Positions 4,792 through 23,788 of a stretch of DNA of 64,000 bases are shown here, one piece after another. The notes beneath the pieces are model-generated. The model had not been told where the DNA came from. It made no database searches and was given only the letters and a program-made list of their open reading frames with translations. The position numbers and the translations under genes were made by a program. Numbering within the stretch: position 1 is the first letter of the stretch; each line of letters begins with the position of its first letter. The DNA comes from Guillardia theta CCMP2712 (Eukaryota > Protista > Cryptophyta): assembly GCF_000315625.1 (NCBI RefSeq), contig NW_005434673.1:124001-188000 (forward strand), written 5' to 3'.

Positions 4792-4990
4792 TACGTCAAA
4801 GTGACTAGCGTACCTGCAAACTAAGAAATCAGCCGTTGCGGCATCAGACGATCAAGATGAAGGTTAGGGGGAAATAGGACGAGACAAGAACCATCATCGA
4901 AAATCACAGAAGAAATCTAGAGGGAGAACAAGATGTAGTGACATTAAACATTTCTTCTTCACTATGTTCCTATTAGCCGAAGGCGAGAAG

Positions 4991-4993
<3 letters not shown>

Positions 4994-5047
<54 letters not shown>
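4994..5047. repeat. (CAG)18 microsatellite
   Basis: Pure cag run. Confidence 0.98.
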
Positions 5048-5050
<3 letters not shown>

Positions 5051-5596
5051 AATATGGCTGGCAATCCAGGGATGGTGGATGGACTCATGAGGGAGGAGGG
5101 GGGAGGGAGGGAGGCTGACGAACAGCGGCAACTGCTTTTAGTAGTGGTTTAGCAAGAGTACAGGTATTAGAATGTGTATGTGGTGGAACAAGAGTAGGAG
5201 GGAAGAGGGAGGAGGGAGGTTGGGAAGGGAAGAAGGGAAATGAAGAAGGAAATGGAAGCATGAAACAAAGCCGACGAGCAGGAATAGGAACACCAGGAGC
5301 ACCAGGAGCGAGAGCGAGAGCAGGAGCAAGAGCAGGAGGAGTGGGTAAGTTGGGGGTGGGGGCTGAATAGTCCCGGGTGAACCCGGCGGAACTTCAAACA
5401 CGAGCCTTGAAGTTAACCATTGCGAAACTCTTATATTACAATACTATGAATAATTACACTGCAAAATTCAAATTTGAGAATGGCCTTTCGATAAAAAGCT
5501 CTCGGAGAGGACTCAAGGATTGAAAATTCAAAACTGAAAGGCGCCTGCCGTACTCCGAAACGAGTACAGTATCTGAATATGGTACCAATGACCAGG

Positions 5597-5805
5597 GTGG
5601 TACCTATGGGTGGTAGCCTAATAATGTGGTAGCCTATGGGTGGGCCTAATAATGTGGTAGCCTATGGGTGGGCCTAATAATGTGGTAGCCTATGGGTGGT
5701 AGCCTAATAATGTGGTAGCCTATGGGTGGGCCTAATAATGTGGTAGCCTATGGGTGGGCCTAATAATGTGGTAGCCTATGGGTGGTAGCCTAATAATGTG
5801 GTAGC
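5597..5805. repeat. Minisatellite of 28/30-bp units with higher-order periodicity
   Basis: Units gtggtagcctatgggtgggcctaataat (28 bp, B) and gtggtagcctatgggtggtagcctaataat (30 bp, A), ordered A-B-B-A-B-B-A. The first A lacks one base. Confidence 0.95.
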
Positions 5806-5829
5806 GCTGTAAAGGAAGTCACAAGTCCC

Positions 5830-6665
5830 TGGTTGAAGTCCGAACTGGCAACTGAACATGTCAGTGTACCGTACTACAGTTGGACCGGGCCGGCCCGGAG
5901 CCGCGGCGGCCCGGCCTGGCATCACCCGAGTCGTCGGATCACGGTCCGGGGCGGCACTGCCCGGCCGGCAGTGAATTACCGGGAGTCGCCGGCGTACCCG
6001 TACCGTGGCCCTGACCGTCGCGACCCGGCTCTAAAGTTTGTCCGGGCCCGGGCAATGAGTTGTTTAAGTCAAGTTCAACGGTTGGTTGCCATTCAATCAT
6101 GGCAGTAATCGGACTCACTGAGTCGGCGAGTTTCACCGATCACCGGCGGACGGTCACTTTGCACTAGCTGAGTGCTTATCGGTGTTCAACCGTGTGAGTG
6201 CTTGTCGGTGTCATACAGCGGCCAACTTGGCAAGTTACAAGTTACGTACCCGGGCCCCGGCAGTGACTCAGCGGGGGCCCACACTCAGCCTGGCAGGTTC
6301 GGACTGTGCCGGGGCCGACCGTCGACCGGGTCACCGTCCGAGACCGGCACTGAGTCCCGAGTCCGGCCCGGGACTCGGGAGACGCCGTCCCGGAACGCGG
6401 CGCCGCAGTGCAGTGCAGTGCAGTCACGCGGCGTGCCGGACTCATCTGGCGGCTGCGCGGCCGCAGACCGTGACCGTGCCTCAGCCTGGCAGCCCGAGAC
6501 TCGGACGGCGTGGCGCCAGCCCGGGCCGCTGTACTCCGAGGCTCGCCGGCCCATCCCCCCCCCCCCCGGGGGGCCGGGCCGCCCATGCGCCGCGGCCAGT
6601 GACTGAACTTCCAAGTTCGGGGCCCGATCCCCTAGTATCCGGGAGTATCCGGGAGTATCCGGGAG
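5830..6665. other. GC/CpG-rich, palindrome-dense intergenic block between divergent genes
   Basis: Dense ccgg, gccggc, actgagt and gactcgg words; no credible protein in any frame. Confidence 0.6.
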
Positions 6666-6693
6666 GATCCGACTTGAGTTTTCAGTTGACAAA

Positions 6694-8445
6694 ATGCCGA
6701 AGGTGCGCTTCTGATGCTGGTTGGGAAGAGAAGGAGGTTGTTGGGTGGCGGATAGAGATGGAGGAAGGGGATGTAGAGCAAGATTGTAGAGGTGTAGAGC
6801 AGAGAGAGTCAAGTTGAGATGTTGTTTGTAAGGATGGATCATGTCATGGTACATCTAAACCAGGAGAGCAGCTGGGTGGGATCAATGTATTGTAGTCGAA
6901 TTGAGATTGAAAGTATATCAGAATGATATGTGAAAAATCTTTATGAATTATTGAAATGTGGAAGCCTCTGGGATGAGAGAGAGAGAGAGGAGGGAGGGAG
7001 GGAGGGAGGGAGGGAGGGAGGGAGGGAGAGTTGTAGTCGATGGTGAACAACTTGTTTCCTGTGAAAGATTGGAGGGCAGGGGCATACTAGAACGAGGTTT
7101 GCTTGCATTCAAGTCACATACAGAAGAGTACGGAGTGAGGGAGTGAGTGAGTGAGTGAGGGAGGGAGGTAGAGAGGGAGGGAGGGGTTTGCTGGTCCGCA
7201 AAGATCCAATTCTTTCGAATTGCACTTACAATTTCTTCAGAAGGGTGGCAAGGGAAAACCGAAAGCCAAAGGCGGAGCGTCGGAGGAGGTTAGGGAGTCT
7301 CCTGACAGATCTGGCTGACATACTGTGTCCGAAGGGAGCTGAGCTTACAGCGGAAGAACGGGAGCAGAAGGCCAAACTTCGTATCGAAGCGCTGGAAAGA
7401 GAACTTGGTCCATCTCCCTGGGAAGTCGTTAGTGTGGTGACTTGCTGCTGCAGTTCAACGTACAGATGTGATGAATCGAGCTCTGCAAGCGCACAATGAA
7501 ATGCGTCAAAAACAGGTAAGAGAGAGCAGACCCCGATCTCAATGCCATGCTCCTGGTTGAATCTTTATGCTGCAGAAAGAGCTCCTGCAGGATTTCGAAA
7601 ATGAGAAGAACAACACGTTCGCCATCACCGCTGATATGGTCACTGAGGGTGTGTTGTATGCCTCTTTGACCTTGAGGGCAGACAAGACAATACAAGAGCA
7701 TGCAGGAGGAGCTCTTGCGGCGGATCAACACCTTAGAGGTCTCGTCGGTGGTCGACTTTGTTTGTATACCTCACACGTCAGTGACAGAATAGCATCCAAG
7801 AGCTGAAAGATCAGCTGGAACTCGCCCGTCAGGTTGACTTGGCCTGTCAGCACGGCCAGTAATGACTCCTGTGCTTTCAGGCCAACGAAGATCTGCGAAA
7901 ACAGAAGGACCAAGTCTGTTGTCCTCCATTGTCGTCCCAGGACACTGACGCCGTTTGGCCTCAGGAGCTGGCGCTGAAAGATGCACAGATAGCAGATCTC
8001 AAACAGAAGATGGAAGATATGGGTGAGAACTGCTCTGTCTATCTTTATCATCGTTCCTCCGTGCATGCTCTTGTCATTGGTTTATGTGATTTTGGTGCTA
8101 TTTTTCTTCGTGTGTTTGATTGTTTATGTGTGTTTGCGTGTGTTTTGTGTGTGTGTTTTTGTATGTATTTGTGTTTGTATGTGTACTGGTCTTCCGTCTT
8201 TCTCGGTTCCTCCGTGGCTCTGATGGAATGTCACGATGTTCGCAGCCATCGAGTTCGGCGACATGCTCAAGGAGACTCTCGACAAGATGAGCGAGAAGAT
8301 AGAGGCGACGAGGTGAGAGGAGGAGGAAGCGGAGGCAACGTCTCTGAGCATGACCTCCCTGTGCAGCAACGAATGGGATCATGATGCGGGGGGGGACGTG
8401 CAGAAGAAGCTGGAAGAGTTTAACATCGGACCCATCGGGATGTGA
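6694..8445 (+). CDS. CCDC153: Coiled-coil protein CCDC153 / dynein regulatory complex subunit DRC12 homolog (multi-exon)
   Basis: Spliced reading: MPK|KGGKGKPKAKGGASEE...KAKLRIEALEREL...QKELLQDFENEKNNTFAITADM|TRQYKSMQEELL...ELALKDAQIADLKQKMEDM|AIEFGDMLKETLDKMSEKIE...KKLEEFNIGPIGM*. First intron 6703-7240 is GT-AG. The motif order matches CCDC153 as I recall it. Confidence 0.72.
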
Positions 8446-8469
8446 AGATTTCTCTCTCTCGTGAATCTC

Positions 8470-10628
8470 TCGTGTAATATTCAAGTGCTTTAATTTTTCA
8501 TTACAATCTGTCGAAACCCCTACTGAGGTGACTCTGAGAGGTACAAGGGTAAAAGATTGCAGCGCTGAGTTTGACTTGGACATCAGCACGTGCTCAGCCC
8601 GAAGAATATCGAGGAGACGATCATAACAAGCATCAGAATGCATCCTGAACCTGCAGGGCCTTATTAGCGAGGCGAAGTCGACAGATTGCTTACCACAGCA
8701 CATCACTAACACCTTGGCTGCAACTTTGGCACCGTGATCTGCACGGGAGCGTGTTCAGTCGTCTAGCAGGAGAAGCTGCATGTGATGTCGTACATTTCTT
8801 CAGCACGAAGGAGGAGAACGTAGAGAGGCCGAGCATCAGGTCTAGGCCATCGATGCACCTTCGTGCTGCGTGAGGGAGTACGAGCGCCTTGCAAGACTTC
8901 AAGACCTGTTGGGGAAGAAGAGAGTCTTGAAGTAAGTCCAGCAGCAGGCCAAGAGGAAGAAAGCCGTGATCTGGCCGAGCAAGCATCAACGTCATCGCCG
9001 CAAGTTTCTAGCAGAGCTGACCCAGACAAGAGCGGGGAACTTGTTGGAGTTGAAGAAGTAGGTGAAGTGTAAGGAAGCGAGAGATATCATCGTCTCCCAT
9101 GCCACCCAGGGCATCCTGTACATGCTCAGCCGTTGGTACATGTAGTAGGATCCAGCCCCGACGAGAGCGAGGAGGACTAGAAACGTTGTGTCGACCCTGG
9201 TCACCGACGAACACTTCCTGGAGTGCCGCATGAAAGTCCGCTGGCGATTTCGCACCAACAGAATGATGGAGAGTAGGAGGGCTGCAGGAAGTTCACCATG
9301 ACAGCAAACAAGCAATATCAGCAGACCCAGGGAGACTGAGGTGATCACGACGGAGATTTCTCCATGGTATCTCGAGGGTGTGCAAACGTAAGGGATCAAG
9401 CATCGGAGGGAGTCCTGCACATTCCAAGGTTTCACAGACTGGAGGAAAGAAACATTCATATCTGCCTGTAGTGGTTGAAGATTCTCAATGATGGGATCAG
9501 CGTGCAGGGGAGGATCTTCGCCCTGCAGCGAGGATTCAGCAGCACCGAGCACATGCCATGCGTTGCTGACCTGCGTGCTCCCAAAGTGGAGGGTGAGATA
9601 ACCGATCAGCGGAGCTCGCTCAAAGCAGTTGGTCTCTGTTGACGTGACGTAGCATCTGAACAGCAGCAGACCGATCACTCCAACGCATAGGGGTGGGACT
9701 TTGACATGCCGGCAGACGGTGGCGAACGCCTTGTAGCCGATCCACCTCCTCGCGTACTCGTTGGCAGAGCTGGCAGACGAATAAACGAGCCTTGAGCCGG
9801 CGGGTTTGATCGCGACAGATCTTGACAAGCGTCAGACGGAAGCAGCACCCCTCCACTGACCTTGAGATCAACGGGTGGTGGTAGCGATCAGCTGGAAGAA
9901 ACTGTGGAGCAGCATGGAAATTCAGAGGAGTGGAGTTTGGCCCCAAGGTCAATCCCTCACATCCATGATGATCGAGTACTCGGGCATGTCTCGCTGCCGC
10001 ATCTTGAAACCTTGAGATCCACGACAGTCAGAGGCTGGAGAAGGGGGAGGGGGAGGGGAAGGGGGAACAGAAGGAGAAATAGCAGGAATTTACGATAGAG
10101 TCCAGGAATAGATCGCGAGTCTGAAGTCATGAAGATCTCATAAGGTGTTTGTCGGACAAGTTCGCCGAGCTGTTTCTCTAGCCCTCGGATTGACAGGTGG
10201 GGCGTGTACACAACGTAGATCGTGTACGTGTAAGTCCAACTGGGACGGTGCTGGTACGAAGCCCGAAGGGTCTCTCCCTTCAAAGTGTAGAGCAAACCAA
10301 ACCGCTGGAAGAAGACGCTGTCAATGAAGAACAGCATGTCGTCAACGCTCGTCCTCGATGACTCGGATGGTCCTGATGACCACGAGCAGTTCAAGCTCTG
10401 AAACGACGTCATCAAGGCTGTCGGGTAATCCGCCTGAATGCGCTTGACCCCCTTTGAGGATGAGAACTCGTTCCAAAGCACAAGGATGGAGACAGCAAAC
10501 ACGATACGAATCAACCAGCGATACCTCGCCTTGTCCAACTCGCTAAAATTTCCTCTTCTAACTCCGTATCGCTCCGATCCTTCAGATTCCTCGAAATCCC
10601 CGGAAGGGGAAGCGTCGGGATGTACCAT
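8470..10628 (-). CDS. Hypothetical multi-exon membrane protein
   Basis: ORFs 9957-10628 and 8992-9828 carry hydrophobic helices (WLIRIVFAVSILVLW; VSLGLLILLVCC; FLVLLALVGAGSYYMY). No family recognised; ends are approximate. Confidence 0.5.
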
Positions 10629-11552
10629 TTATGTCCCTTTGCTACCCCTCGACACGGGATCCGAGCCTTTCAGCCAGCCAGCACGAGCGTGTGGACATTC
10701 ATCTCTGCGCTCGTCATGAAGGGATCACCCAACTCAAACCTCCTCACGCCTTCCAGAAAGGACAGGTCAAAGTTCCATCACAATTATCAATGGATCCTCA
10801 TCAGGTAGATCCACACTCGTCCGTGTTATCATCATCATCCTCGTCCTCCTTATCCTCGTCCTCCTTACCGCACTCGTCATCGTCGTCTTCCTCCTTGACC
10901 CCGTCCTCGTCCTTGTCCGCGCTTGTTGGCTCCTGCCATGCTCTCTCCGACAGCAGCTCCGACAGGGTCTGCGACAGGGTCTTCCTGTAGCATTGAAAGG
11001 TAAGAAGGGGTAGGTAGGGTACCACCTTTGGTGGCTGCTTGGTTGTTTTAGTGATTAAAGGGTGGGTGGTATTGCAAAGGTGTGGGTGAGGTACTTGTCT
11101 TTCTGTGGATGGGGGGTGGGGGTGGGGGTTATATTTGAATGAACATGGCGGGAGAGGTGAGGCAGAGGAGGAGGGGAGGTTAGAGGAAGAAGAGGAGGGG
11201 ACAGACTTTGCTTGAGAGATTGGAAGACAGGAGGGAGGAGGGAGGAGGGAGGAGGGAGGAGGGAGGAGAGTGAGGAGGAGAGGGCAGGGACCAGTGGGGA
11301 AAGGGCGAGGGAATGGGAGATCAGAGACAGCGAGGATAGTAATCCAAACGTAGTTGGGCAGGAAGAGAGAAGTGGGAAGTCATGAGTAGCTCGATATCAT
11401 TCCGTCTGAACTCATGGTTGTCTTCACCGAAAGACCGTCAGTGAGATTTGAGGTTACATGACCGTTCTCTCAACCAGGTGAAATTTGAATGCGTGCTGAG
11501 AGGACCTCGTCTGTAACATTCTCTTGGGCACAACAGTTCTTTTTGCATTTTG

Positions 11553-14114
11553 ATGGATACCATGGCAAGCATGAACTCGCCTGAAGAAATTCGCTCCAAG
11601 TGCGCGAGTGAAAATGAGAAGATTAAGATCGACATCTGTCAAGAAATAGTGTTTGAGGACGATAACAGCGACGATGAAAGGTTTCTCCTGATGGCAAAAC
11701 CTCAGCAGAATGAGACAGTGATGATACCATCGGTGAAGGTAACAGAGAGGGTTGACCAACACTTGGATGCAAGTCAGTCACTGTTTCGGCGTGGCAAGAG
11801 CTACATCAAGTTCTCTCCCAAGACGATGGAGGAGCAGGACGAGCTTGTAGATTACGACCTCGACTCGGATGATGAAGAGTTTGTCAGCCAGCACAAGGGA
11901 AGTTTGACCGAAGATGACATGGAAGCCGCAATGCACGCGCTTGAAATCTCTTCTTTCCGCTTCATGATGTCCAACGTGCGAGTTCCCGAGCCTTTGTCTC
12001 CCTCAGATGGCTATGCTCCGGACTTTCTCTTGGCAAACGATCAAGAGGCAGAGAACCTTGATCCGATGAGCCAACCGAGGAAGCTGGACAAGCCTATGAA
12101 AGAAGGCTCTCTAATCTCTAAGTGTAAAAAGAAACACAGCGGTGGAAGGCGTCGGAATCTGAAATGCCTGCAAAGTCCTCGCTCAGATGCTGATTCGAAC
12201 CTAGAGCTTATCTCCACTAAGGTGAGCCCGAAGATTAAATGCATTGCAAACTTGTGACAGGTGGTTCAGGAAAGCGACGATCCCTTTCAAGATGAATCCG
12301 ACGCCAGGTGTGCGGTATGTCTGAACGATGGGGCCGAAGAGGGAAACATTCTTGTCTTTTGTGATGGTGAGTCAAATCTAACAGCTGGAACGCGAGGACT
12401 GAATTGTTTGTACCTAGGTTGTGGAATAGCTGTACATCAGGTTTGCTACGGGATCATGAAAGTGCCCGATGAAGACGAGTGCTGGTTCTGCTGCAAGTGC
12501 CGAGAACAGAAGGGGGCGCCGGGCGCTGCATGTGACTTGTGCAGCATGCCTGGCGGAGCCTTGAAGATGACTGACGACGGCCGCTTCGCTCACCTGTCCT
12601 GTGCTCTCTGGGTGCCTGAAACGTCGTTGGAGGATGGCTTTCTGCTGGAGCCTGTGATGGGCATGCGGGACATCAACAAGGCAAGGTGGAAGCTAAGGTG
12701 CAGCATCTGCAAGGAGAGGAGGGGAGCGTGCATCCAGTGCTCGAACCGTCGGTGTGCGGTTGCCTTCCACGTGACCTGTGCTCAGTACGCTCAGCTCTAC
12801 ATGTGGTGGGGGGAGAAACCCGGCAAGGACGAAGTCATCCGCAGTGTTTTCTGCCCAAAGCATCCCCCGTCTGACGTCCTCCCCAACTTCTCCTACTGCC
12901 CCGAGCTGAAGCCGTTTGCTCCCGAACTCCTCCAGGCGCTCTGCGGCTCCGAGGTGGACCCGCCCAAGTCCCTGACGAGGCTCTGGAAGAAGCCGGGCAA
13001 GGGAACCCCTTTCAAGTCCAGCGGCTCGGAGCATCCGGAGGACCTTCTCTTTAGCGTCAGCCCGGTTTGCAACTTGCGGGAGGAGGACGACTTCGAGGTG
13101 CCTTACCAGCACAAGCTCAGCTGCAGCCCGGTGGCAAACAGGAAGGCAAACGGCCTGGGAGCCAATCACGCGAGGATCCAGGCGGAGGTTGTCAATGACA
13201 AGTTCTCGATGGTCTTTCCTGGGGTCTGCTGCGTCTGCCTCAACGACCTCGACGACGCTGAGAACCCTCTGCTGGAGTGCTCGGGCTGCAAGCTGACGGT
13301 CCATCAGTTCTGCTGCGGTGAGGCGGTGAAGAAGAAATCAGCTTTCTCCTGCTCCAGATGCTCTTTGCTGGCTCCGTCGGAGACCCAGTCTGCCCGCTGT
13401 TACTTGTGCCCGGTGGAAGGAGGATTCCTCAAGAGAGCGGTGACGGGCGAGTGGCTTCACTTGCAGTGCGCGTTGTGGATCGACGAGATCAGGTTCGACC
13501 AGCCGGAGAAGCTCGACGAGATTACTGGGGTTCAGGATGTGAGCAAGGACAGGCTGAAGCTCGTCTGCCAGATCTGCAAGCAGGAGGGACGGGGAGCATG
13601 CATCCAGTGCAAGAAGGGCGGCTGCTTCGCTGCCTTCCACGTCACCTGCGCTCAGCTCGCCGGCTGTCACCTCGCGATCCTCCCGGACGAGGACGATGCT
13701 GACACGACCTTCCACTCCTTCTGCTGCCGCCACAGGCCCAAGTACATCTGGAAGGGACGGTACGTCGACAGCCTCAAGTTCCTCCAAGTGAAGGACTTGC
13801 TCCCCCTCTCCATGTTGACCGCCGACGATGCCAACCTGACCCTCTCGGAGCTTCACAACAGAAGGATTGACAAGCTCCGGTCGCCCATCTTTGCGCACTG
13901 GAAGGCGAAGAGGGAGAGGAGAAACCATTTCCTCATGCCCCGTCACGTAGTGGCCCTCCAGGACTTGGTCGCCTTCCTACCGGGGGAGCTGCAGCTGCAC
14001 AAGGACCCCTTCTACATGCCTCCTGCCCTGGTCCAGCCACGGAAGCGGAGGGGCCCCAGGCTGTCTTCGAGCGGGAAGAGGAAGCAGAGCAAGCTCAAGA
14101 CGAAGATGCGATGA
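11553..14114 (+). CDS. BRPF/JADE/NTO1-like chromatin reader: EPc-like N-terminal motif plus two PZP (PHD-Zn knuckle-PHD) modules
   Basis: VDYDLDSDDEEFV (EPc/EPL1 motif). PZP1: CAVC...VFCDG|CGIAVHQVCYG...AHLSCALWVPE...CSIC...GACIQC...FHVTCA. PZP2: CCVC...LECSGCKLTVHQFC...LHLQCALWIDE...GACIQC...FHVTCA. Short introns near 12221-12260 and 12367-12417. Confidence 0.88.
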
Positions 14115-14188
14115 CAGCAAGGGCAGCCTCGTCTCACGCGGCCTCTCGCTCTCCTCCTCTGATATTCATCTAATTAAAATGAGTTTAA

Positions 14189-15958
14189 CTAGCTCAGTCT
14201 ACTACTACTACCCCTGCTGAGAATTCCTCCGTCCTCCCTCTTCGCTTCGCCCTCCACGCAAAAACTTCCTTCACCCCTCCTGCGATCACTTCTTCGGTTT
14301 GAAGATGTTGTGTAGCACCTCCGCATTCTTCGCCTCATCCTGCCAGGAGTGTCAGCGGGAAACCAGCGGCAGTTGCTCAAGACCTCGGCCTTGCGCAGGG
14401 CAGCTTCTGCCTTGGCCCTCATCATGGTGCACTTGGAGCGATACGTCATGGTCTTGAGCCGGTGGGAAACTGCTCTCCTCTCAAATTTCTCCCCCAGCTG
14501 CATGACAGCCTGAGCCGCCTTCGACGTTCGATCCGCCTCGGCCTTGCAGAGATAGAGTGAGCTGGGGCAGAGGGTTGTATGGGGAGGGAGCGAGGGCGAC
14601 CAAGACACAGGGACGCAAGAAGGAGGGGGAGGGAGAGAGGCAAGGAGAAGGAGAAAGAGAGGGAGAGGGAGAGGGAGAGTGACAAGGGAGATGGAGGGAG
14701 AGAGGGAGAACGAGAAGGGAGAGTGAGAGTGGGAGTGGGAGTGAGAGTGGGAGTGGGATTGAGAGTGGGAGTGGGAGTGGGAGTGGGAGGAGGGAAAGGG
14801 GGGAGGGAGTGGGAGGGAGGGAGTGGGAGGGAGGGAGGGAGGGAGGGAGTGGGAGGGAGGGAGTGGGAGGGAGGGCTGATTTCACCCGTAGCTCATCCGC
14901 CTTGTTCTTATGCAGTGTGGCCTTCGAGAGGATGACGTGGGCCTGAGCGAGGATCTTCTTGGCCTTGTCCTCCTTCTCTGTAGCCTCGCGTCAGACCCTC
15001 TCACATCACAAGCACAAGGTCAAAGTAGCGCTCACTATCTCCCTCTGTCTTCTCCTTCTCCTTCTCCTTGCCGTGCGTAGTGGCATTGAGCTGACAAACA
15101 GCAGCAGGTCAGCAGAGGCGTCAGCGGAGGAGGATGAGTACCGCCTTCCCCTTGGAGAGCAACTTTGTGCCGGAGGTCATGAGATTTTGACCTGCTTCCT
15201 TGAGAGAAGATCCTTTCTTGTGAAGAGCTTCAAACCTGCCCGAAGCTCGTCAACCTCCTCTTTCCCCCTTCTATCCTCGTCACGTTTTCTGCTCGATGTT
15301 GGCGGCCCCGAGAAGCTCAGCTGCTCTCCCCTCCAGTGACGTCGCGGCTTCTTTCTGCGTTCTCGCGCGATTCTCCAGCCCATCGTCAGTATTCTGAAGA
15401 ACTTCCGCTATCTTGCAAGTTCTTTTCGCTTTCGTGTCAAGGGACAACCCTTCATGGCTCTCCTCATCTGAAAGACTAATCACCAACGAGACATGACAAC
15501 AGTCCTCAAGTGACATGTGTATGTTGTAATGAGTGCATTTGTGAGGACCCACCTGCATTCGCCTCCTCCTTCTTCGCGCGTTTCATGAGCTGCCGCATCT
15601 GTCGTGAGATTCTGTCTTGGAACTGGCTGTCTTCCTTGTCTAACATCTGCACATCCTGCGTTGACAAGACAACATCTGAGCCAGTGATCATGTCGGCATC
15701 GTTGAACGCCACAAGCGCAACTCCAAAGAGGAGCGCGACAAGCACAGCCCCGCAGACTCGGAGGGCGGAGCTGTCGCCTCGCAGAAAGGAACGACATGCT
15801 CTCTGCGCTGGCCTTGACGAGTCGTCTGAAGTCTGAATAAGAGAGGCTTGAGATGAGCAAGAGGAGGAGGAAGGGGAGGAGGAGGAAGAGGGGGAGGAAG
15901 AGGGGGATGATGATGGGGAGGACGCTGAAACCCCAGCGACTTGCTCCTGCATGGTCAT
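14189..15958 (-). CDS. Hypothetical single-TM, charged coiled-coil protein (multi-exon)
   Basis: MTMQEQVAG..., a TM helix (VCGAVLVALLFGVALVAF), then charged helical exons at 15180-15480 and 14190-14550. Confidence 0.55.
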
Positions 15959-15967
15959 CAGGAATAG

Positions 15968-16038
15968 ACACCCCACGTGACACCCCACGTGATGAGAGAA
16001 TGAGGTCATGTGATAAGTCACATGTTATATCACGTGAT
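15968..16038. promoter_or_regulatory. E-box/G-box cluster in a ~140-bp bidirectional promoter
   Basis: CACGTG at 15974, 15986 and 16031; CATGTG at 16007; CACATG at 16019. They lie between the divergent ATGs at 15958(-) and 16098(+). Confidence 0.55.
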
Positions 16039-16097
16039 GGACCTTGCAAATTCCAGGGGGGATGAGGCCCACGGGACGCACAAAAAGAAAGCATCGC

Positions 16098-18694
16098 ATG
16101 GCGCTCCTGCAGCTGCTCCTGCTCATGCTGGGATCAGAAGCAGCGATGTCCTCCCTTTCCTCCTCCTCCTCCTCCTCCTCCTCCTTGTCCTTGTCCTCCT
16201 CTCCCACATCTCATCCCTACTCTCCTTCTTTTTGTAATTTGGCCTTTGCATTGCCATCGGGTCGATCCCTGCTCCCTGCTCCTTGTGCAGCTGGCAGGTC
16301 TGGTTCAACAACATTCATGCCAGCTGCTCGATTCCTCACGCGGCATCAACATGTCTTGAGACCATGCATCTGCCGAACAAGGAGAGGATCGTTGATTCTC
16401 CCCGCCATGTCGGCAGCTCGTGGCGACGCGAACTTGGCAGAAGCAGCCAAGGCGCTAACAACGTCAAGGTACATTGATGCTCATAATCTGCTTGAAGAAG
16501 CAAGGTTCGAGTATCTCAAGGCCGGAGTGACAGACAGGGACGAGCTCATCAAAGCCATCAGAAAGAGAATAGACGATGCTCTCAACGTCATGTGCTCTTC
16601 CAGTGACGCCAAACCAGCACAGCCGTCAGCATCTCAAGCTGCGCCACAGGCCGGGCCTCCCGGCATGGAGTTGAGTCAGAGATTGAGATTAGCGAAGCAA
16701 GAGGGCGACGATCTGATTAACCAGGCATCAAAGGCTCTCGGCAATCGCGAGTTCCTCAAAGCAAGGTCCCTTGCAGAGAAGGCCAGGGCATCCTTTCAAG
16801 CAGCTGGGTCGAGTGTTGCCCGCGAGAGGGAGAATATCGTTGGGAATCTGCTGTCGTATATTCAAGTGGAGGAGGAGAGAGTCGAAGCAAATCGAAGGAG
16901 AAAGCTGAAGCAGCAGAAGCAAGAAGAAGAGGTGTGATGATATTCTTGAAATGACCGGACCGGTTCCACTGATGCCTTGACGCCCTTTCTCAAGGTCAAG
17001 CAAATGGCGAAGAGGGTTGAGGATGCCCTGGACTCATCACTGGCATTTCCCACAGATGGCGAGCAAGCCAAGACGGAGGAGCCAACGATTGAAAGTTCCC
17101 CAAAGCCAGACCTTTGCATCTTGGTGGACAACGGTTCCTCGAGGTGACGTTTGCAGTGAAAGTCACGTGGAGACTGAGAAGACTACAACTGAAACAGGGC
17201 TTCCTCCACGAAGCTGTTGCGCTCGATCGCAGAGAGATTGTCAAAGAGAACAGGTTGGTAGACAGATGTATTTCTTCATTTCTGATAACATTTCTAACTA
17301 CATGTACAGGTGTTGATGTCACTGCGGTGTCTCTTGCACATGCAGATAAAACACCAGCTGAGGTATGAAGATGATATTCACTCCTCGACTTCCTTGCCTT
17401 TGTGTCTTTCATGATTATGCGGCACATAGGAACTTGATGGGACTCCTGCCAGAGTTTTTTCGACGTTCTTGCGGGAGGAAGTTCGGTAAGTGTGCTTGAC
17501 CATTTATGGTTTTAGTTCAAGTATGACAAGGTATTCAGAGACCGAGACATCAAGACTATTCTTGTGTTGCCGTTGTTTCTTGGGCCGAGCAAGGTAGAGT
17601 CCAAGATAGCAGCGGTGTACGTTTGCCCCCCCTGACGCGTCAAAAGGCCGTCACGAAGCGAATACCCGATATCCTCCAAGGGGTCAACGACGGTATTGCA
17701 TGGCACTGGCAGAATCTTTTGTCCCGACTGATCGTTCCCCAAGAGATCAGCGAAATCAAGTGGTTCGTTGCGCCCCCTCTATGTCAAGACAACAGATTGG
17801 TAAGTCTTGAGCTCAACCCACGTCGGTTTTTACTGACGAGGCAAAAAGGTCTCCCTCATGGAAACTGAAGTGCGTCGAACAATCGAGGAGAACTCGCTGG
17901 ATAAGGAAAATCCCTACATCATACGCCCAAGTCTGACGTGCTTCACAGCCTCACGTGATCGTTGTCGATCACGGATCCCCCTCGCCAGAAGTCGTCGCTG
18001 TCAGAGATTCTCTGGCTGATCGTCTTCGGTGCCACACTCTCTCTCCCTGCTGCTCCCTCCTCACCAAACTTACCAGAACTAGCATGATCACTGACGATTG
18101 TGTGTCCCAAGTTCACGCTGCGAGCATGGAAAGGTGACCGGAGCTCTACAAATCTTCCGATTCTCACGCCATTGCAGGAGACCGGGACCCGAGTATGCAT
18201 TTTGCGATCCTCTCTTGATCGATTGTATCCCTCAGGTGTAAGCTCCTCTTCTCCCTCGTCCCGTCACCCCCTTGCTCTCTGCTCCTTTTCCTCCCTCGTC
18301 TCCGTCTCGCCATCTTCTGTTTCTTCCTCTCCCTTACAACTTCAAACTCTTCACCCTGCTCCTGTCTCGTCTCTGTGTGAGCTCCGCATGCAGGTCGGCG
18401 GTGGGGACGGCGACATCGTGCTTTCCATGGCGTTCTTGCTGCCAGGCACACACGCAGGAGAAGGAGGAGACATCGACGAGATCTGCGAGAAGGCACTGAT
18501 GGAGAGCGGGAGCAGGTGATCACTTCTCGAGCCAACTCACCATGATCAGTCACCCGTGCTCTGATATCAACGTTGGTAGGAGGAGAGTTTTCAAGACACG
18601 TCTGATGGGCGAGAGTGAGCTTCTCCTTGACATCTTGCATCGGCAGTATGAGATGGGCCTTCCCAAGCTCTTCCCTCTGAGAAATAAGTTGTGA
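16098..18694 (+). CDS. Probably plastid-targeted CbiX-like (class II chelatase fold) protein with an N-terminal helical/TPR-like region (multi-exon)
   Basis: Signal peptide MALLQLLLLMLGSEAA followed by a Ser/Arg-rich transit-like stretch. Later exons: LVDNGSSR, VTAVSLAHADKTP, LVLPLFLGPS, VIVVDHGSPSPEVVAVRD, ASMER/RPGPEYAFCDPLL, MAFLLPGTHAGEGGDI, i.e. two CbiX-type lobes. Confidence 0.72.
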
Positions 18695-19700
18695 ATGAAG
18701 TTCTCTCTACCCCTCGCCCTCTCTATCTCAGAATTACATCCAGGGCACTCCATTACAACCCATACCAGGCGTGGGATGGCAGTCCCGGTCGTGCAGAGCC
18801 TCTGCTCTCTTTACGTGATCCCTTGCAAAATATTCCTTCTCTCTACTCTCCGCTTCTCACTGCTTCGCTCTCGTCTTTCACTCAACCTCCTCCCTCCTCC
18901 CTCCTCCTCCTCCCTCCTCCTCCTCCCCCCTCCCCCTTCCTCCTCCTCCTCCCTCCTCCTCCTCCCTCCTCGCTCGATGCTGCGAGTGGGGGGAACAAGG
19001 AAAGTTCTCTTGCGAGCTCGACGACGCGGGATGGCTGACCAGCAGCGTGCAAGGGAGTTGTCGACTGACGAGAGGAGGAAGAGCTCCATTGCCAATGCAC
19101 CTCATCTACCATCTCTACCCCCTTGAACACTAATACAGTACCCCACCGTCATAACCCCTCCTTGTACTCACCCCCGTTGGACATGAGGAATGGACCCCTG
19201 TGTCCATCACCTACCCATCATAAACATGAAATCACTCTCAATAACCCCCACCCCCTGATAAATACAAGTACCCCCCAAATTTGATCAGAGGATACCAATC
19301 CGACAACTTTTTCCTATTGATATGTTGGTAAAAGACCGGTACATTTCACACATTATGTGACCCACCCATCTTTCTCTGGCTCCACCCCCGAAAAAGTACC
19401 CCACCCTGTTTCCAAAAACTTGTTGGAGATCGCTATGCGGCCAAGATGGGAAAGAAAGAGACTCTTTACTCAAAGAAAGGATGATGTGATGTGATGTGAT
19501 GTGATATGATGTGATATGATGTGATATATGATATGAAGTTGGTAATGAAAGCTGCAGAATATGTCGCGAACTATGCAGATCTTCGAGACGATAGGTCACG
19601 ATGGGAGGTGCACAATAGAATTATTTGCTTTCAACATGTTGCACTTGCTCTCACAAGCACTTGGTTGGGTATGTGACTCTGCATCTTGACGCAGCACACC

Positions 19701-20984
19701 ATGACCACTCGTCGAGTTCTGCTTCTCGATGGAATTTCTGTCTGCTTACTGGGTCAGCCTTCCGTCAAGTCCTTGTCAGATGCTAACTCCCGTTGAACTC
19801 TCAGCCCTCTCTCTAGGGTCAGGGTCAGCAAACATCTTCCTGTGTAATGATGGGAATGTTTGGAATAAGCAAGCATGCGACAAAGTTCTTCGGCTGAGAG
19901 GAGGAGTGATGTGGGTTGGCGGAGGAAAGACTTTCAACAGGTGTCCTCCCTCACTTTTTCTCGCCCTCCTCTCTTTCCTGACCCCCTCCATCCTCCCTCC
20001 TCGCCACCTCCCTCCCGTATCCTCTGCTTGTGGCCCTTCTTGCTGCCAGCCCCCTGTAGCCAGTTATGTTGGTCTCACTTGCTCATGTTGATGTGCAGGA
20101 CTCACGACCCATCGGCAAGTCCGGAAGACGTCGAAGACACGTTTGCTCCTCTGAGATCGAGGTCAGTAGAGCTCTGCTTCTGACGTGTCTTGAAGTTGTG
20201 TCGACGAGGTTCGACCTCTGATGCAAGTTTGCTAGGTCCGAGAGCGCGAATCGTATCAAGCAGCTGGTGCAGAAGTATGGATCAAAATATCGAACGAATG
20301 AGGTAGCGAGAGGCAGAGCGATGGATAGGGGAGAAAGCGCGAGAAGGGGAGGTCAAGGAGGGAGGGAGGGAGGGAGGGAGGGAGGGAGGGAGGGACAGCA
20401 TGCAGTAAGTGCTTGTTTGTCTCAGATTGTCAGTCTTGAAGAAGAAGCAAAATATCTGATCCGAGCACAAAAGCTTCTGCGAGTGCAGGTGAGTTTGTTT
20501 GTATTTCCGTCTCGTTCTCACTTTGAGAGGGTGCGACAACCATGACCATTGTTGTCTACAGTCGCTTTCTGTGGAGTTCAGTGCTGCGAGCCAGTTTCAG
20601 GTGAGAGAGGAAATGAAGAGTGCGGGGAAGGGTACCTGGGCAGGATCTGGTGGAGGAGGGGAAGGGAGTGGTGGGGAGAAAATACGTCAAATGCAAATGA
20701 TGCTGTGATTCTGCAATGCATTCCAGAGTTATGTGGTTGGAGATCTGTCTTTCAAGAGTCACAGGTAGGCTACAAATATGGAATTGCAGAGAGAATATGA
20801 GTTTTGTGCGATGAAGGGTTGGATACATGTTTGGGCATGTCGACAAGAACAGGAACGGTGAGGCACTCGCTCAAATGGTTGCTGAGAATCTAATTGGTTT
20901 CCTTCAAGTGTTCTGCGATGTCATCTATGAGCCTCCACAGCGAGGAGACGAGGAAGCTTACAACCTGACGGAGGTGACGGCGAT

Positions 20985-21019
<35 letters not shown>

Positions 21020-22844
21020 TGACGATGGTGGTGGTGGTGGTGGTGGTGGTGGTGGTGGTGGTGGTGGTGGTGATGATGATGATGATAGAGATCTGATTTG
21101 GATCGTGCTTTCATTTTAGTTCAAGCTGAGAGAAATTTGTTCAGGTGGATCCCGATGAAGAAAAAGTTGAGCGTCTTGCGTCATTGCTGGGGATGCGGAT
21201 GGTGAGAAGATGACACTATGAAGAGGAGAGGGGAGGAGGGGAGAAGGAGGAGGAATCTTGGCAAGCGAAGAAGAGAATTTGACGATGATGATACCAGGTT
21301 GGGATGGTTTTCTCTGTCAAACCTCGCAAGTCAATTTTTAGTAGTCAGGTACTTCGACCTTCCTTCCCTCCTAACTTCCCCTCTCTCCCCTCACCTCCCC
21401 AATTGCCTTGCTGCTCCTGCCTCCTCCTATCCTTTCTGGTGCTCTGACCATTACACTCCTCCGATGTCTTTGCGTCCTTCCTTGAATCTACTTCTCCTTC
21501 TGTTTGACACGCTTGTGATACTCCAGGACGTCATGCTGGCATGCTCGCTACAACACAAGGTGACGTTGACAGGGAAAACAAGGGCGAGAAGGAGGAAAGG
21601 AGGTGGAGAGCGGAGGTGGGGGTGGATTGGGCGTTAGGCGATAGCGGATAAACTTCAGGGGAAGGAGGAGGAAGGTTATGAAGTCTGCCTCACATTGATA
21701 TAGATGGAGAAGAAACATGGATACGACTTTGCGAGCTCCATGGTGTCGGCGGTGATCACTCGAAATGGTGCGAGGAGGAGGAGGAGGAGGAGGAGGAGGA
21801 GGAGGAGGAGGAGGAGGAGGAGGAGGGGGGGGGGATGATGGTGGGGGTGGTGGTGGTGGAGGAGGAGGAGTGAAGCGCGTGCAGAGACAACGGACTCTAT
21901 CGTCTTCGAAGCATATCAGATCAGCGATCTCTGTCTAGACATGTACCGCAGGGACATCTTGGTCCCTCCCAACAACCCCAACAGAGGATACACAAGTATG
22001 ATTTGTGGAGCTACTTGTTATGCGTGAGACGTCAACATGTTCAAACATGTCACTGTGTTGATGCTTTCTGTGTTGTCGTTCTTCCTTGATATGAAATGCC
22101 CCAGGAACTGTCCAAGATGTGCTTGTAGAGCGGAAAGACACACAGAAGGTGATGCCGACGACGATGATAGACTTCTACTCATCTTCTATCAGGTCGACAA
22201 CGACTTCTTTATCAACACCGGTGACTTGTCTTGCATTTCTTGCTCCTTTCTGAACATGATCCTGCCAACAGTTCCAATCAAGACGCACAATTCTGAGATT
22301 TGGGGAAACCGTGAAGTGAGTCACTACTCATTTTCTATCCCCTTTCATCTTCCTTCCATCTTCCTCCTGTCGTTGCTATCACTCTCCCCCTCTCCCCTCC
22401 CCCCTCCCAGTCTCCGTCACTGATCTCGAGCTCACGTTTCGCTTCCAGGCTTTCTTCCCTGTCAAGAACCGACCGGGACAAGTACCTTGACATGTCTCAA
22501 TGCAACATGCACCTGTGACGAGCTGGCAGGATCAGAACAGGATGGAAGTGAAACACATCCTGCTGTCCCACGAGGAGGTGCCCTTCTGCATCAGAGTAAG
22601 AACGCAACGCTACTCCGTCGTGCTCATGCTAACTCCGTCTGCAGATGCGCGACTTTCACATGCTCCTCTACCTGTCGAACATGTTGGATCCTCTTACAGA
22701 CCTTCCTATCATCTGCAAGGTGAGGGTTAACCTCTGACATCTTGTCCCGCTTTCCCCCTGACTTGTTCATAGTCGGTCAGGGAGGACGTTGAGCTGCAGC
22801 AAGGACATATCGAGCTAGTCAAATCCATTGCCTACATGAAGTGA
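19701..22844 (+). CDS. NPL4: NPL4-like protein (Cdc48/p97 cofactor) with an N-terminal signal peptide and leader; many exons; possible alternative 3' exon to 22957
   Basis: Exons read SLSVEFSAASQFQ, RVGYMFG, CDVIYEPPQRG, VERLASLLGMRMVGW, VFEAYQISDLC, VDNDFFINTVPI, FPVKNR, MRDFHMLLYL, matching NPL4. The leader is spliced over the 52-nt intron 19753-19804. Confidence 0.85.
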
Positions 22845-23140
22845 AACTGACGAGGTTCTGCGCTATGTGTCCTTCGCTCCTCCTCAGGTCGGGAAGGAAT
22901 GTGGAGGACTTGCCAATGAAAAAGCAGGGAGGACCCACGAGGGTTCTCATGTGTTAAAAAACACATGAGAACCTACGCCCGATGCCTAGTGCAAGCAACG
23001 GAGCTGATCGCTACACTTCAACGTCGTTCAAAGTTCTCAACCATTTACAAAGAGTAGACGGGATAGCCTGAACAAGCTGAGCTATAGACTTGTGACTGAC
23101 TAACGGATCTTCCACTGTTCTACATGTCTGGAAAATTTGA

Positions 23141-23788
23141 TCACTGCAAACAACTTGTTAAACCCACAACCAAGCTTGTATGCAAACGAGATTACCTCAG
23201 TATTCGAAGCAGCCTTCTCTCCATCCTCTTCCTCCTCTTCCTTCTTTCCATCCAGTCCCTCGATGGCTGGCAAACAAATCACCATCCCCAGATTGCAAGG
23301 GCAGTCACTTACGTCCATCATCCTCATCCTCGTCGTCAGAGTCAAACCCTCCTGCTCCTGCTCCTCCGAAGTCAAACTTATCAAATCCGCTCATATCCAG
23401 ATCGCCCTGTCACCACCCGCAGACGGTCAAATGGAAGCGCAAGATTACAATACATTACATCGCGAGCCTCATCTTCGTCTTTCCACTTGTCCCAGTCGAC
23501 TTTGAGCGTATGGATCTTTTTCCCCTTGTGCAAGGTGTCCCAATAATCCCCAACTTCCTTCCTCATGAAGACGAAAGCAACGTCACGAGCTCCAACCTTC
23601 CATGAGCTCTGCTTTGGATCAACTGTACCGAAGAAATCCAAACTCAACTCATGATCTTCACTCTTGAATGTGAACGAAGTCTCGGTAACATTGATGGTTG
23701 TCTTATTTGGATCAAGGTTTGGAATGTTGATAGTGAACAAAATCTTATCGTTTCTCTGGGCCCATTTGCAATCTGGCAATTTGGACAT
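23141..23788 (-). CDS. Hsp90 co-chaperone p23 (Sba1/PTGES3 family)
   Basis: PDCKWAQRNDKILFTI...YWDTLHKGKKIHTLKVDWDKWKDEDE, then a Gly/acidic tail GDLDMSGFDKFDFGGAGAGGFDSDDEDEDD. The 3' end is approximate. Confidence 0.92.

What the first reader, a model, noticed from the sequence alone, without database searches (positions are those of the whole stretch)
19701..19940. NPL4 with a signal peptide and a ubiquitin-tail LRLRGG motif in its leader: candidate periplastid SELMA component
Seen: splicing the 52-nt intron 19753-19804 gives MTTRRVLLLDGISVCLLALSLGSGSA-NIFLCNDGNVWNKQACDKV-LRLRGG-VMWV..., in front of an NPL4 that lacks a visible N-terminal UBL domain. LRLRGG (19888-19905) is exactly the C terminus of ubiquitin. 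Established: cytosolic Npl4 has no signal peptide; algae with red secondary plastids use a symbiont-derived ERAD-like machinery (SELMA) in the periplastid compartment; leaders without Phe at +1 target that compartment; deubiquitinases cut after LRLRGG. Inference: this is a periplastid Npl4 whose leader may be removed by a ubiquitin-type protease.
Basis: partly seen in the sequence, partly recalled or inferred. Interest (0 to 1): 0.7.

Follow-up and report, generated by a model that had tools for sequence, protein, structure and literature searches.

The report
Periplastid Npl4 with ubiquitin-tail leader
This is the alga Guillardia theta's already known plastid-side copy of the protein-extraction cofactor Npl4, and its import leader ends in the last six residues of ubiquitin. 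That ending recurs on roughly a hundred or more imported proteins in this genome and is probably where the leader is cut off.

Summary
Window 19701-22844 (+) is a single-copy, 21-exon gene of Guillardia theta. Every exon matches a transcript-derived ORF (P0016, 413 aa) and the NCBI model GUITHDRAFT_98945. This includes Met 19701, the 52-nt intron 19753-19804 and LRLRGG at 19888-19905.

The protein is a red-alga/plant-type Npl4 with no zinc fingers. Its ancestral N-terminal ubiquitin-like domain has been replaced by a signal peptide, a spacer of about 20 aa, and LRLRGG. A separate host Npl4 with zinc fingers lies on contig C8.

Twelve cryptophyte orthologues keep (L/M)RLRGG followed by (V/I)MWVGGG, while the leader in front of it varies freely.

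The motif is not special to Npl4. Of 71 LRLRGG sites I sampled, 34 follow a signal-peptide-like start, against 5 of 355 control frames. The proteins behind them are nucleo-cytosolic housekeeping proteins (EF-1alpha-like GTPase, eL22, Hat1, a tRNA synthetase).

The scan had already found this motif on other DNA of this genome (at least 20 notes). I found no paper describing it.

- Periplastid sNpl4 itself is already published.
- Cutting after GG by a ubiquitin-type protease fits the data but is untested; I put it at about 0.55.
- A USP-type deubiquitinase gene carries the same kind of leader.

The parts
19701..22844 (+). Whole coding region of sNpl4 (GUITHDRAFT_98945): 21 exons, 413 codons plus stop. 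Exon limits: 19701-19752, 19805-19940, 20099-20161, 20236-20302, 20426-20488, 20562-20600, 20727-20764, 20817-20857, 20909-20973, 21145-21201, 21298-21348, 21527-21559, 21704-21767, 21885-21995, 22105-22148, 22193-22220, 22272-22315, 22449-22481, 22530-22595, 22645-22719, 22773-22844.
   Evidence: Exon-by-exon identity to P0016. All 20 introns have GT..AG ends and are 44-178 nt long. It is the only locus in the genome that matches P0016.
19701..19752 (+). Exon 1: start codon, basic n-region and the first part of the hydrophobic core of the signal peptide.
   Evidence: The best 11-residue hydropathy window is residues 11-21, mean Kyte-Doolittle 2.38.
19753..19804 (+). Intron 1, 52 nt, phase 1, GT..AG; it splits the signal peptide.
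   Evidence: The junction is present in three independent database ORFs, P0016, P0032 and P0033.
19805..19887 (+). End of the signal peptide (small-residue -3,-1 sites at residues 22-26) and a spacer of about 20 aa, the transit-peptide-like part. It is not conserved between species.
19888..19905 (+). LRLRGG box (residues 46-51), identical to ubiquitin residues 71-76. It marks the end of the leader and is the proposed cleavage site after GG.
   Evidence: Read directly. Conserved as (L/M)RLRGG in 12 cryptophyte orthologues. It is a genome-wide leader-end motif.
19906..19940 (+). Conserved first residues of the presumed mature protein, (V/I)MWVGGG(R/K)xFN. W-V-G-G-G-K-T-F at 19912-19935 fits the SHP-box pattern F-x-G-x-G-x-x-h, except that W replaces F.
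   Evidence: Alignment A2. SHP consensus from PMC8181520. Predicted disordered. Binding was not tested.
20426..22841 (+). Helical linker, MPN domain and C-terminal domain of Npl4 (residues about 107-413).
   Evidence: phmmer alignment of residues 118-410 to Arabidopsis NPL4-like 2. Foldseek hits to Npl4 structures. pLDDT is mostly 80-95.
19561..19689 (+). Upstream 42-codon ORF whose fifth codon starts M-Q-I-F. It is not part of the protein.
   Evidence: It lies in a different frame, an in-frame stop at 19674 separates the two, and it has no Pfam match.

Best explanation
The gene encodes the symbiont-type Npl4 (sNpl4) of Guillardia theta. This is the cofactor of the periplastid Cdc48 motor of the SELMA import machine.

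It descends from a red-alga/plant-type Npl4, which has a ubiquitin-like domain, a helical linker, MPN and CTD domains, and no zinc fingers. Here the N-terminal ubiquitin-like domain has been replaced by a bipartite leader:
- a signal peptide (about residues 1-26) for entry into the ER;
- a variable spacer of about 20 residues;
- the box LRLRGG (residues 46-51).

The box is the common ending of the leaders of proteins sent to the periplastid compartment and nucleomorph in this alga.

Most likely mechanism (inferred): once the precursor has crossed the periplastid membrane, a ubiquitin-specific cysteine protease in that compartment binds the box as it would the ubiquitin tail and cuts after GG. 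This removes the leader, together with any ubiquitin attached to it during SELMA transport. Mature sNpl4 would then start with V-M-W-V-G-G-G. This SHP-box-like peptide may dock on the N domain of periplastid Cdc48 in place of the lost ubiquitin-like domain.

Shown here: the gene model, the family, loss of the ubiquitin-like domain and zinc fingers, conservation of the box, and its genome-wide link to signal peptides and nucleo-cytosolic cargo.

Inferred: the compartment, the cleavage, the enzyme class, and the SHP function.
For: - Gene model: matches the transcript ORF exactly.
- Family: NPL4 fold and sequence family.
- Paralogues: a host copy with zf-NPL4 lies elsewhere, and the window gene is single-copy.
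- Ancestry: red-algal Npl4 are the closest outsiders. They have an N-terminal ubiquitin-like domain, no signal peptide and no box. Published phylogeny derives cryptophyte s_npl4 from red algae (PMC12412216).
- Conservation: it switches on exactly at the box in 12 orthologues. All 11 complete N-termini have a hydrophobic core plus (-3,-1) sites and a 15-30 aa spacer.
- Genome-wide counts: the LRLRGG pattern gives 353 hits, against 255 for the backwards control and 193 for the reverse-order peptide.
- Link to signal peptides: 34 of 71 sampled true sites follow a signal-peptide-like start 28-82 aa upstream, against 5 of 355 control frames.
- Cargo: proteins behind the box include an EF-Tu/EF-1alpha GTPase whose profile starts 4 residues after GG, ribosomal eL22, Hat1, an aminoacyl-tRNA synthetase OB fold and a GT4/GT1 glycosyltransferase. 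With an ER signal peptide, such proteins make sense only for the relict cytoplasm and nucleus.
- Residue after the box: no Pro at +1 in the 34 leader sites.
- Structure: the box region is disordered in the model, as expected for a linear site.
- Candidate enzymes: a USP-family deubiquitinase gene (G000:C13, L136) carries a signal peptide and a leader ending L-S-L-R-G-G. A conserved nucleomorph-encoded peptidase of the ZUFSP/UfSP type is reported as a putative deubiquitinase of unknown role (PMC6559170). ptDUP is reported absent from cryptophytes (PMC12412216).
Against: - No mature N-terminus has been measured, and no localisation was done here.
- Cellular deubiquitinases usually also need the folded body of ubiquitin, which these leaders lack (own knowledge).
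- In Toxoplasma PUBL, a GG just before the ubiquitin-like domain is not processed and is dispensable (PMC5487736).
- The signal peptide was judged only by hydropathy and the (-3,-1) rule, because SignalP/ASAFind were not available.
- RNA reads laid on the window covered only the 3' end, so the splice evidence rests on database ORFs.
- One database ORF (P0033) carries a 31-residue extension in front of Met 19701. If real, it would give an unusually long n-region.
Confidence: 0.55

Rival explanations
1. The box is a recognition or sorting signal, not a cut site. It would be read by a ubiquitin-binding part of the import machine (E1/E2/E3, Ufd1/Npl4, or a receptor), or it would keep cargo in the periplastid compartment. 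The leader would then be trimmed elsewhere or kept.
For: It explains the same conservation and genome-wide pattern. The motif is the only constant element in otherwise free leaders. In sNpl4 it abuts another conserved peptide. The GG in front of the Toxoplasma PUBL domain is not processed.
Against: In several genes the box sits directly on the native first residues of the mature protein, for example the EF-1alpha-like GTPase and a protein whose own Met follows GG. That placement is what a junction or cut site predicts. Six tail residues are not known to bind ubiquitin receptors, which contact the ubiquitin body (own knowledge).
Confidence: 0.2
2. The leader is cut at or near the box by a peptidase unrelated to deubiquitinases, such as a dedicated periplastid processing peptidase. 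On this reading the likeness to the ubiquitin tail is convergent.
For: Deubiquitinases normally need the ubiquitin fold (own knowledge). A nucleomorph-encoded tail-specific protease of unknown site of action is reported (PMC6559170).
Against: A six-of-six identity to ubiquitin residues 71-76, in a compartment that runs on a ubiquitin system, is hard to get by convergence. The variants seen (M for the first L, L-S-L-R-G-G) keep the L-R-G-G core.
Confidence: 0.15
3. The gene is mis-modelled. The 'signal peptide' would be an inner hydrophobic strand of a ubiquitin-like domain that starts at the upstream M-Q-I-F (19573) and ends in LRLRGG, making this a cytosolic UBL-Npl4.
For: M-Q-I-F lies 128 nt upstream, and the stretch R-R-V-L-L-L-D-G resembles ubiquitin's third strand. 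A real acceptor exists at 19693-94.
Against: - Joining would need a 26-nt intron, while the gene's 20 introns are 44-178 nt.
- The frames differ, and a TGA at 19674 precedes the ATG.
- The transcript ORF starts at 19701.
- Orthologues start with the hydrophobic segment and have only 15-30 variable residues before the box.
- There is no Pfam ubiquitin match even at E 10.
- Residues 1-73 are disordered in the model.
Confidence: 0.02
4. It is an ER or secretory-pathway protein that never reaches the periplastid compartment.
For: Only a signal peptide is inferred, and no localisation was done.
Against: Npl4 works with Cdc48 in a cytoplasm-like compartment. The same leader type fronts ribosomal, translation and chromatin proteins. 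Published work counts cryptophyte nuclear s_npl4 as part of SELMA.
Confidence: 0.03

Closest known systems
Symbiont-specific Npl4 (s_Npl4) of the SELMA translocon in algae with red complex plastids (Stork et al. 2012; PMC12412216)
   Same: It is an Npl4 paralogue beside the host ERAD copy, nuclear-encoded in cryptophytes, red-alga-related, and has an N-terminal targeting leader.
   Different: Nothing in the papers I could search mentions the LRLRGG box, the conserved W-x-G-x-G-x-x-F peptide behind it, or the loss of the ubiquitin-like domain.
Plant/red-algal Npl4 (e.g. Arabidopsis NPL4-like 2, PDB 9m3z chain G; red-algal P0027, P0053, P0075)
   Same: The MPN plus C-terminal domain core and helical linker are shared, and there are no Npl4 zinc fingers of the fungal/animal type. 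Sequence identity is 30-35%.
   Different: Those proteins begin with a ubiquitin-like domain that binds Cdc48. Here that domain is gone, replaced by a cleavable-looking leader and a short linear motif.
Ubiquitin precursors and ubiquitin-ribosomal protein fusions, cut after LRLRGG by deubiquitinases
   Same: The same six residues sit directly in front of the first residue of the released protein, and no Pro occurs at +1.
   Different: There is no ubiquitin fold in front of the tail, only a signal peptide and a disordered spacer. Processing is unproven.
Bipartite targeting signals of cryptophyte and diatom periplastid proteins (signal peptide plus transit-peptide-like part without aromatic +1)
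   Same: Same architecture, and a non-aromatic +1.
   Different: A fixed six-residue ending is not part of the described signal. The enzyme that trims periplastid residents is unknown (own knowledge; literature searches).
SHP box (F-x-G-x-G-x-x-h) of Ufd1, p47/Shp1 and Derlins
   Same: W-V-G-G-G-(R/K)-x-F right after the box fits the spacing and the glycines. It lies in a disordered stretch of a Cdc48 cofactor.
   Different: The first position is W, not F. Binding to Cdc48 was not tested.

Membership tests
NPL4 family (Pfam PF05021; MPN plus CTD core) | Sequence match to the NPL4 profile | tested here: met
   Precomputed PF05021 on P0016 and all orthologues. Exon 21887-21994 alone scores E 0.008. 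phmmer finds Arabidopsis NPL4-like 2 at E 3.9e-37 over residues 118-410.
NPL4 family (Pfam PF05021; MPN plus CTD core) | Npl4 fold | tested here: met
   AlphaFold model: pTM 0.73, residues 74-413 confident. The top 15 Foldseek hits are all Npl4 structures, E 3.6e-28 to 2.4e-14.
Fungal/animal-type Npl4 | zf-NPL4 zinc-finger domain (PF05020) | tested here: not met
   In the genome, PF05020 matches only the host copy on C8 and a weak site on C49. The window protein has about 65 residues between the box and the MPN region, with no Cys/His cluster.
Canonical Npl4 of any type | N-terminal ubiquitin-like (UBXL) domain | tested here: not met
   Residues 1-73 are disordered. No Pfam match on the N-terminal exons. 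Red-algal relatives have the domain.
SELMA component sNpl4 | Separate paralogue beside the host ERAD Npl4 | tested here: met
   Host copy at G000:C8:747057-748522. The window gene is single-copy.
SELMA component sNpl4 | Signal peptide followed by a transit-peptide-like stretch with a non-aromatic +1 | tested here: inconclusive
   Hydropathy and the (-3,-1) rule fit in G. theta and in 10 orthologues, and candidate +1 residues are S, A or N. SignalP/ASAFind were not available.
SELMA component sNpl4 | Red-algal ancestry | tested here: inconclusive
   The nearest outsiders are red-algal. Cryptophyte sNpl4 is monophyletic (100/100) next to red algae when rooted on green plants. I included no host-type outgroup. 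Published trees support the ancestry.
SELMA component sNpl4 | Location in the periplastid compartment and binding to sCdc48/sUfd1 | not testable with these tools
   Needs microscopy or biochemistry.
Ubiquitin / ubiquitin-like proteins | Beta-grasp fold in front of the GG tail | tested here: not met
   No Pfam ubiquitin match on exons 19573-19668 or 19807-19938 even at E 10. The model is disordered there. Only 15-30 variable residues precede the box in orthologues.
Deubiquitinase substrates | Cleavage of the peptide bond after GG | not testable with these tools
   Only positional evidence is available.
SHP box | F-x-G-x-G-x-x-h consensus and binding to the Cdc48 N domain | tested here: inconclusive
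   The pattern fits with W at position 1, in all 14 orthologues that cover the site. Consensus from PMC8181520. No binding test was done.

The most novel reading that the evidence does not exclude
In cryptophytes, a ubiquitin-specific protease of the periplastid compartment would act as the presequence peptidase. It would cut every imported resident after a built-in ubiquitin tail. One stroke would then remove both the leader and the ubiquitin put on it by SELMA, which would explain why cryptophytes lack ptDUP. sNpl4 itself would mature in this way, and the cut would expose an N-terminal SHP-like peptide that replaces its lost ubiquitin-like domain for docking on Cdc48.
Probability: 0.35. Interest if true: 0.85.

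Novelty: new variant of a known kind. Interest (0 to 1): 0.68.

Why it matters
How proteins that stay in the periplastid compartment lose their targeting leader is an open point in the biology of complex plastids. A fixed ubiquitin-tail ending offers three things:
- a sequence rule for predicting the periplastid and nucleomorph proteome of cryptophytes;
- a precise prediction of mature N-termini;
- a short list of candidate enzymes.

All three can be tested directly by N-terminal proteomics, GG-to-AA leader-GFP fusions and in vitro cleavage.

For Npl4 itself, the case shows how a Cdc48 cofactor was remodelled after endosymbiotic gene transfer. A folded docking domain was traded for a leader plus a short linear motif.

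The gene as such, and its role in SELMA, are not new.

Tried and rejected
- **RNA reads.** The one read-laying run gave no coverage of the 5' exons. Twelve probable RNA runs hold 0.21-0.26 of the words, as spliced mRNA would, but that is indirect.
- **Pfam on single exons.** Only one weak NPL4 hit. One call failed on a frame error.
- I redid the step from coordinates only.
- **Joined model.** Exons were searched by reference, and full-length work used database proteins returned by the tools (P0016 and others).
- **The big HMMER search.** With one 36-aa exon it returned orthologues at 54-66% identity, not the G. theta protein itself. The word search with their alignment then found it.
- **Ubiquitin-like domain starting at the upstream M-Q-I-F.** Considered and rejected; see rival 3.
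- **The 31-residue extension of P0033.** It is not encoded in the 19.7 kb upstream. Its first 18 residues are 89% identical to a repeat with at least 8 identical copies. I treat it as a chimeric assembly or a rare transcript, unresolved.
- **Second LRLRGG-coding site in the window (12941-12958).** It has no leader and looks like chance.
- **UCH-family (C12) genes on C19, C274 and C8.** No leader-plus-box within about 2-3 kb upstream.
- **Not attempted.** A complex prediction of the SHP-like peptide with periplastid Cdc48, because the nucleomorph-encoded Cdc48 was not available as a session sequence. sNpl4 of diatoms and haptophytes was not retrieved, so I cannot say whether the box is confined to cryptophytes.
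- **Stork et al. 2012 (PMC3536273).** Not held.

Full report
**Organism and locus.** The window is G000:C1:124001-188000 of an 87.1-Mb, 669-contig assembly. I confirmed this: the protein encoded here is, exon for exon, a member of a cluster that holds EKX55164.1/XP_005842144.1, 'hypothetical protein GUITHDRAFT_98945 [Guillardia theta CCMP2712]'.

**Observation.** Reading the DNA gives the following:
- ATG at 19701;
- exon 1 to 19752;
- a 52-nt GT..AG intron (19753-19804);
- exon 2 from 19805 to 19940, with L-R-L-R-G-G at 19888-19905.

I mapped 21 exons ending at the stop codon 22842-22844. Their lengths add up to 1242 nt, which is 413 codons plus stop. All 20 introns are GT..AG and 44-178 nt long.

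Instead I searched one 36-aa exon by reference against the representative library. That gave orthologues, and their alignment (A1) retrieved 30 relatives. One of them is P0016, an MMETSP transcript ORF marked complete. Each of the 21 exon translations is found in P0016 in order, with only the split codons between them.

The NCBI model P0032 and the UniRef entry P0033 share the exon 1/exon 2 junction. An in-frame TGA lies at 19674.

**What the protein is.** Pfam PF05021 is precomputed on P0016 and all its relatives. phmmer against PDB sequences gives Arabidopsis NPL4-like protein 2 at E 3.9e-37, aligned over residues 118-410.

An AlphaFold model built on alignment A2 has pTM 0.73. Residues 74-413 are confident and residues 1-73 are below pLDDT 50. 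Its 15 best Foldseek matches in the PDB are all Npl4 structures, led by the Arabidopsis CDC48A-NPL4-UFD1B complex.

The genome holds a second, canonical Npl4 on contig C8, with a zf-NPL4 match directly upstream of the NPL4 domain. The window gene is the only match to P0016.

The nearest relatives outside cryptophytes are red-algal Npl4 (Agarophyton, Rhodochaete, Porphyridium, Rhodosorus). These begin with a ubiquitin-like domain and have no signal peptide and no LRLRGG.

In a maximum-likelihood tree, the seven cryptophyte sequences form one group (100/100) beside the red algae when rooted on green plants. I had no host-type outgroup, so this only agrees with, and does not replace, the published result. 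That result states that cryptophyte s_npl4 is nuclear-encoded and derived from red algae (PMC12412216). The gene is thus the known periplastid sNpl4.

**The leader and its conservation.** Eleven orthologues with complete N-termini, from Baffinella, Rhodomonas-like and unnamed cryptophyte assemblies, all share these features:
- a hydrophobic core (mean Kyte-Doolittle 2.1-2.8 over 11 residues) within the first 40 residues;
- small-residue (-3,-1) sites behind it;
- 15-30 poorly conserved residues;
- then RLRGG.

In alignment A2, conservation switches on exactly at (L/M)RLRGG. It continues as (V/I)MWVGGG(R/K)xFN(R/K)(T/S). Candidate +1 residues after the signal peptide are S, A, N or T, never aromatic.

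**The motif is genome-wide.** The degenerate DNA pattern for LRLRGG occurs 353 times. The same pattern read backwards occurs 255 times, and the reverse-order peptide GGRLRL 193 times.

I fetched the 71 true L-R-L-R-G-G sites among the first 100 listed (contigs C1-C22) and translated upstream in frame. None has a ubiquitin body.

With a simple rule, 34 of 71 sites are positive, against 5 of 355 control frames at the same places (odds ratio 64, p 3e-25). The rule requires:
- a Met 20-95 residues upstream;
- a 12-residue window with at least 9 hydrophobic and no charged residues;
- at least 8 residues of spacer.

This is a lower bound, because leaders split by an intron, like the one in this window, are missed.

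Flanks are S/P/R/G-rich upstream, free downstream, and never Pro at +1. First exons behind the box contain:
- an EF-Tu/EF-1alpha GTPase domain whose profile starts four residues after GG;
- ribosomal protein eL22;
- the Hat1 N-terminal domain;
- an aminoacyl-tRNA-synthetase OB fold;
- a GT4/GT1 glycosyltransferase;
- a methyltransferase;
- a RETICULATA-like protein.

Cytosolic-type translation and chromatin proteins behind an ER signal peptide are what one expects for the relict cytoplasm and nucleus of the endosymbiont.

The scan had noted this motif at least 20 times on other DNA of this genome. My counts are independent of those notes and agree with them.

**Mechanism.** The box equals ubiquitin residues 71-76, the part that lies in the active-site cleft of deubiquitinases (own knowledge). 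Three observations bear on its role:
- it marks the leader/mature junction in unrelated proteins;
- the compartment runs a ubiquitin-dependent import machine;
- cryptophytes are reported to lack ptDUP.

I therefore favour cleavage after GG by a ubiquitin-type protease, at about 0.55.

Two candidate enzymes emerged:
- **A USP gene.** Its continuous 456-codon open frame (L136:1600-2967) starts with a signal-peptide-like segment and a leader ending L-S-L-R-G-G. It runs into the USP Cys-box exon (PF00443, E 3.7e-7). A stretch after the box looks ubiquitin-like by eye, but Pfam did not confirm it.
- **A nucleomorph-encoded ZUFSP/UfSP-type peptidase.** It is conserved in four cryptophytes and is described as a putative deubiquitinase of unknown role (PMC6559170).

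Against this reading: most deubiquitinases also need the ubiquitin fold, and the GG in front of Toxoplasma PUBL is not processed.

**A point specific to sNpl4.** The conserved W-V-G-G-G-(R/K)-x-F directly after the box fits the SHP-box consensus F-x-G-x-G-x-x-h (PMC8181520), apart from W for F. It lies in a disordered segment. Since the ubiquitin-like domain that normally docks Npl4 on the Cdc48 N domain is missing, this peptide may take over that role. This is inference only.

**Rejected reading.** An upstream ORF (19561-19689) contains M-Q-I-F, and the hydrophobic segment resembles ubiquitin's third strand. I therefore tested whether the 'signal peptide' is part of a mis-modelled ubiquitin-like domain. 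It is not, for these reasons:
- the frames differ;
- a stop at 19674 intervenes;
- the join would need a 26-nt intron;
- the transcript ORF starts at 19701;
- orthologues lack any such domain;
- Pfam finds nothing;
- the region is disordered in the model.

**Literature.** No held paper combines LRLRGG with 'transit peptide', or LRGG with 'nucleomorph' or 'Guillardia'. The SELMA phylogeny paper and the nucleomorph proteome paper do not mention the motif. Subscription papers, Stork et al. 2012 among them, could not be read.

**Verdict.**
- The gene and its periplastid role are already known.
- The ubiquitin-tail ending of the leader is real, conserved and general, and appears undescribed.
- Its cleavage by a deubiquitinase is the best but unproven explanation.

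Noticed in passing
G000:C13:~4750-7975 (+); L136:1654-3199: A USP-family deubiquitinase gene has a signal-peptide-like start and a leader ending L-S-L-R-G-G. A ubiquitin-like-looking stretch follows, and after about 380 residues of open frame comes the USP Cys box (PF00443, E 3.7e-7). It is a predicted periplastid deubiquitinase and a candidate for the leader-cutting enzyme.
   Followed up: partly
window 19561-19689 (+): A 42-codon upstream ORF in another frame has M-Q-I-F, the first four residues of ubiquitin, starting at its fifth codon, 128 nt before the real start. There is no Pfam match. It may be chance or a uORF.
   Followed up: partly
window 19693-19695; P0033:1-31; L005-L012: UniRef A0A7S4P317 (444 aa) carries a 31-residue N-terminal extension joined exactly at the AG at 19693-94. 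Its first 18 residues are 89% identical to a repeat present in at least 8 identical copies, several near contig ends. It is not encoded in the 19.7 kb upstream. It is probably a chimeric assembly or a transcript driven by a mobile element.
   Followed up: partly
window 21298-21348 (+): The NCBI model XP_005842144 (396 aa) skips this 17-codon exon. The exon is present in the transcript ORF and conserved in all orthologues, so the public annotation is one exon short.
   Followed up: yes
G000:C3:1063750-1065350 (-); L090:1366-1533: An EF-1alpha-like GTPase has a signal peptide, a spacer and LRLRGG placed directly on the native G-K-E-K start. This is a clean example of the box at the mature N-terminus.
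   Followed up: partly
window 12941-12958 (+): A second LRLRGG-coding 18-mer in the window has no Met or hydrophobic start upstream and has Pro at +1. It looks like a chance occurrence.
   Followed up: yes
window 20345-20390, 20966-21085, 21775-21870: Introns of the gene carry long simple repeats of (GGGA)n, (GATGAC)n/(GGT)n and (GAG)n type. The read tool skipped them.
   Followed up: no
window 23381-23788 (-): The neighbouring gene on the minus strand appears to be a p23/CS-domain co-chaperone (by eye; no domain search was run). It has no leader and is well covered by 3'-end RNA reads with a poly(A) signature near 23027.
   Followed up: no
G000:C8:747057-748522 (-): The host-type Npl4, with zf-NPL4 followed by the NPL4 domain, is the ERAD counterpart of the window gene.
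   Followed up: partly
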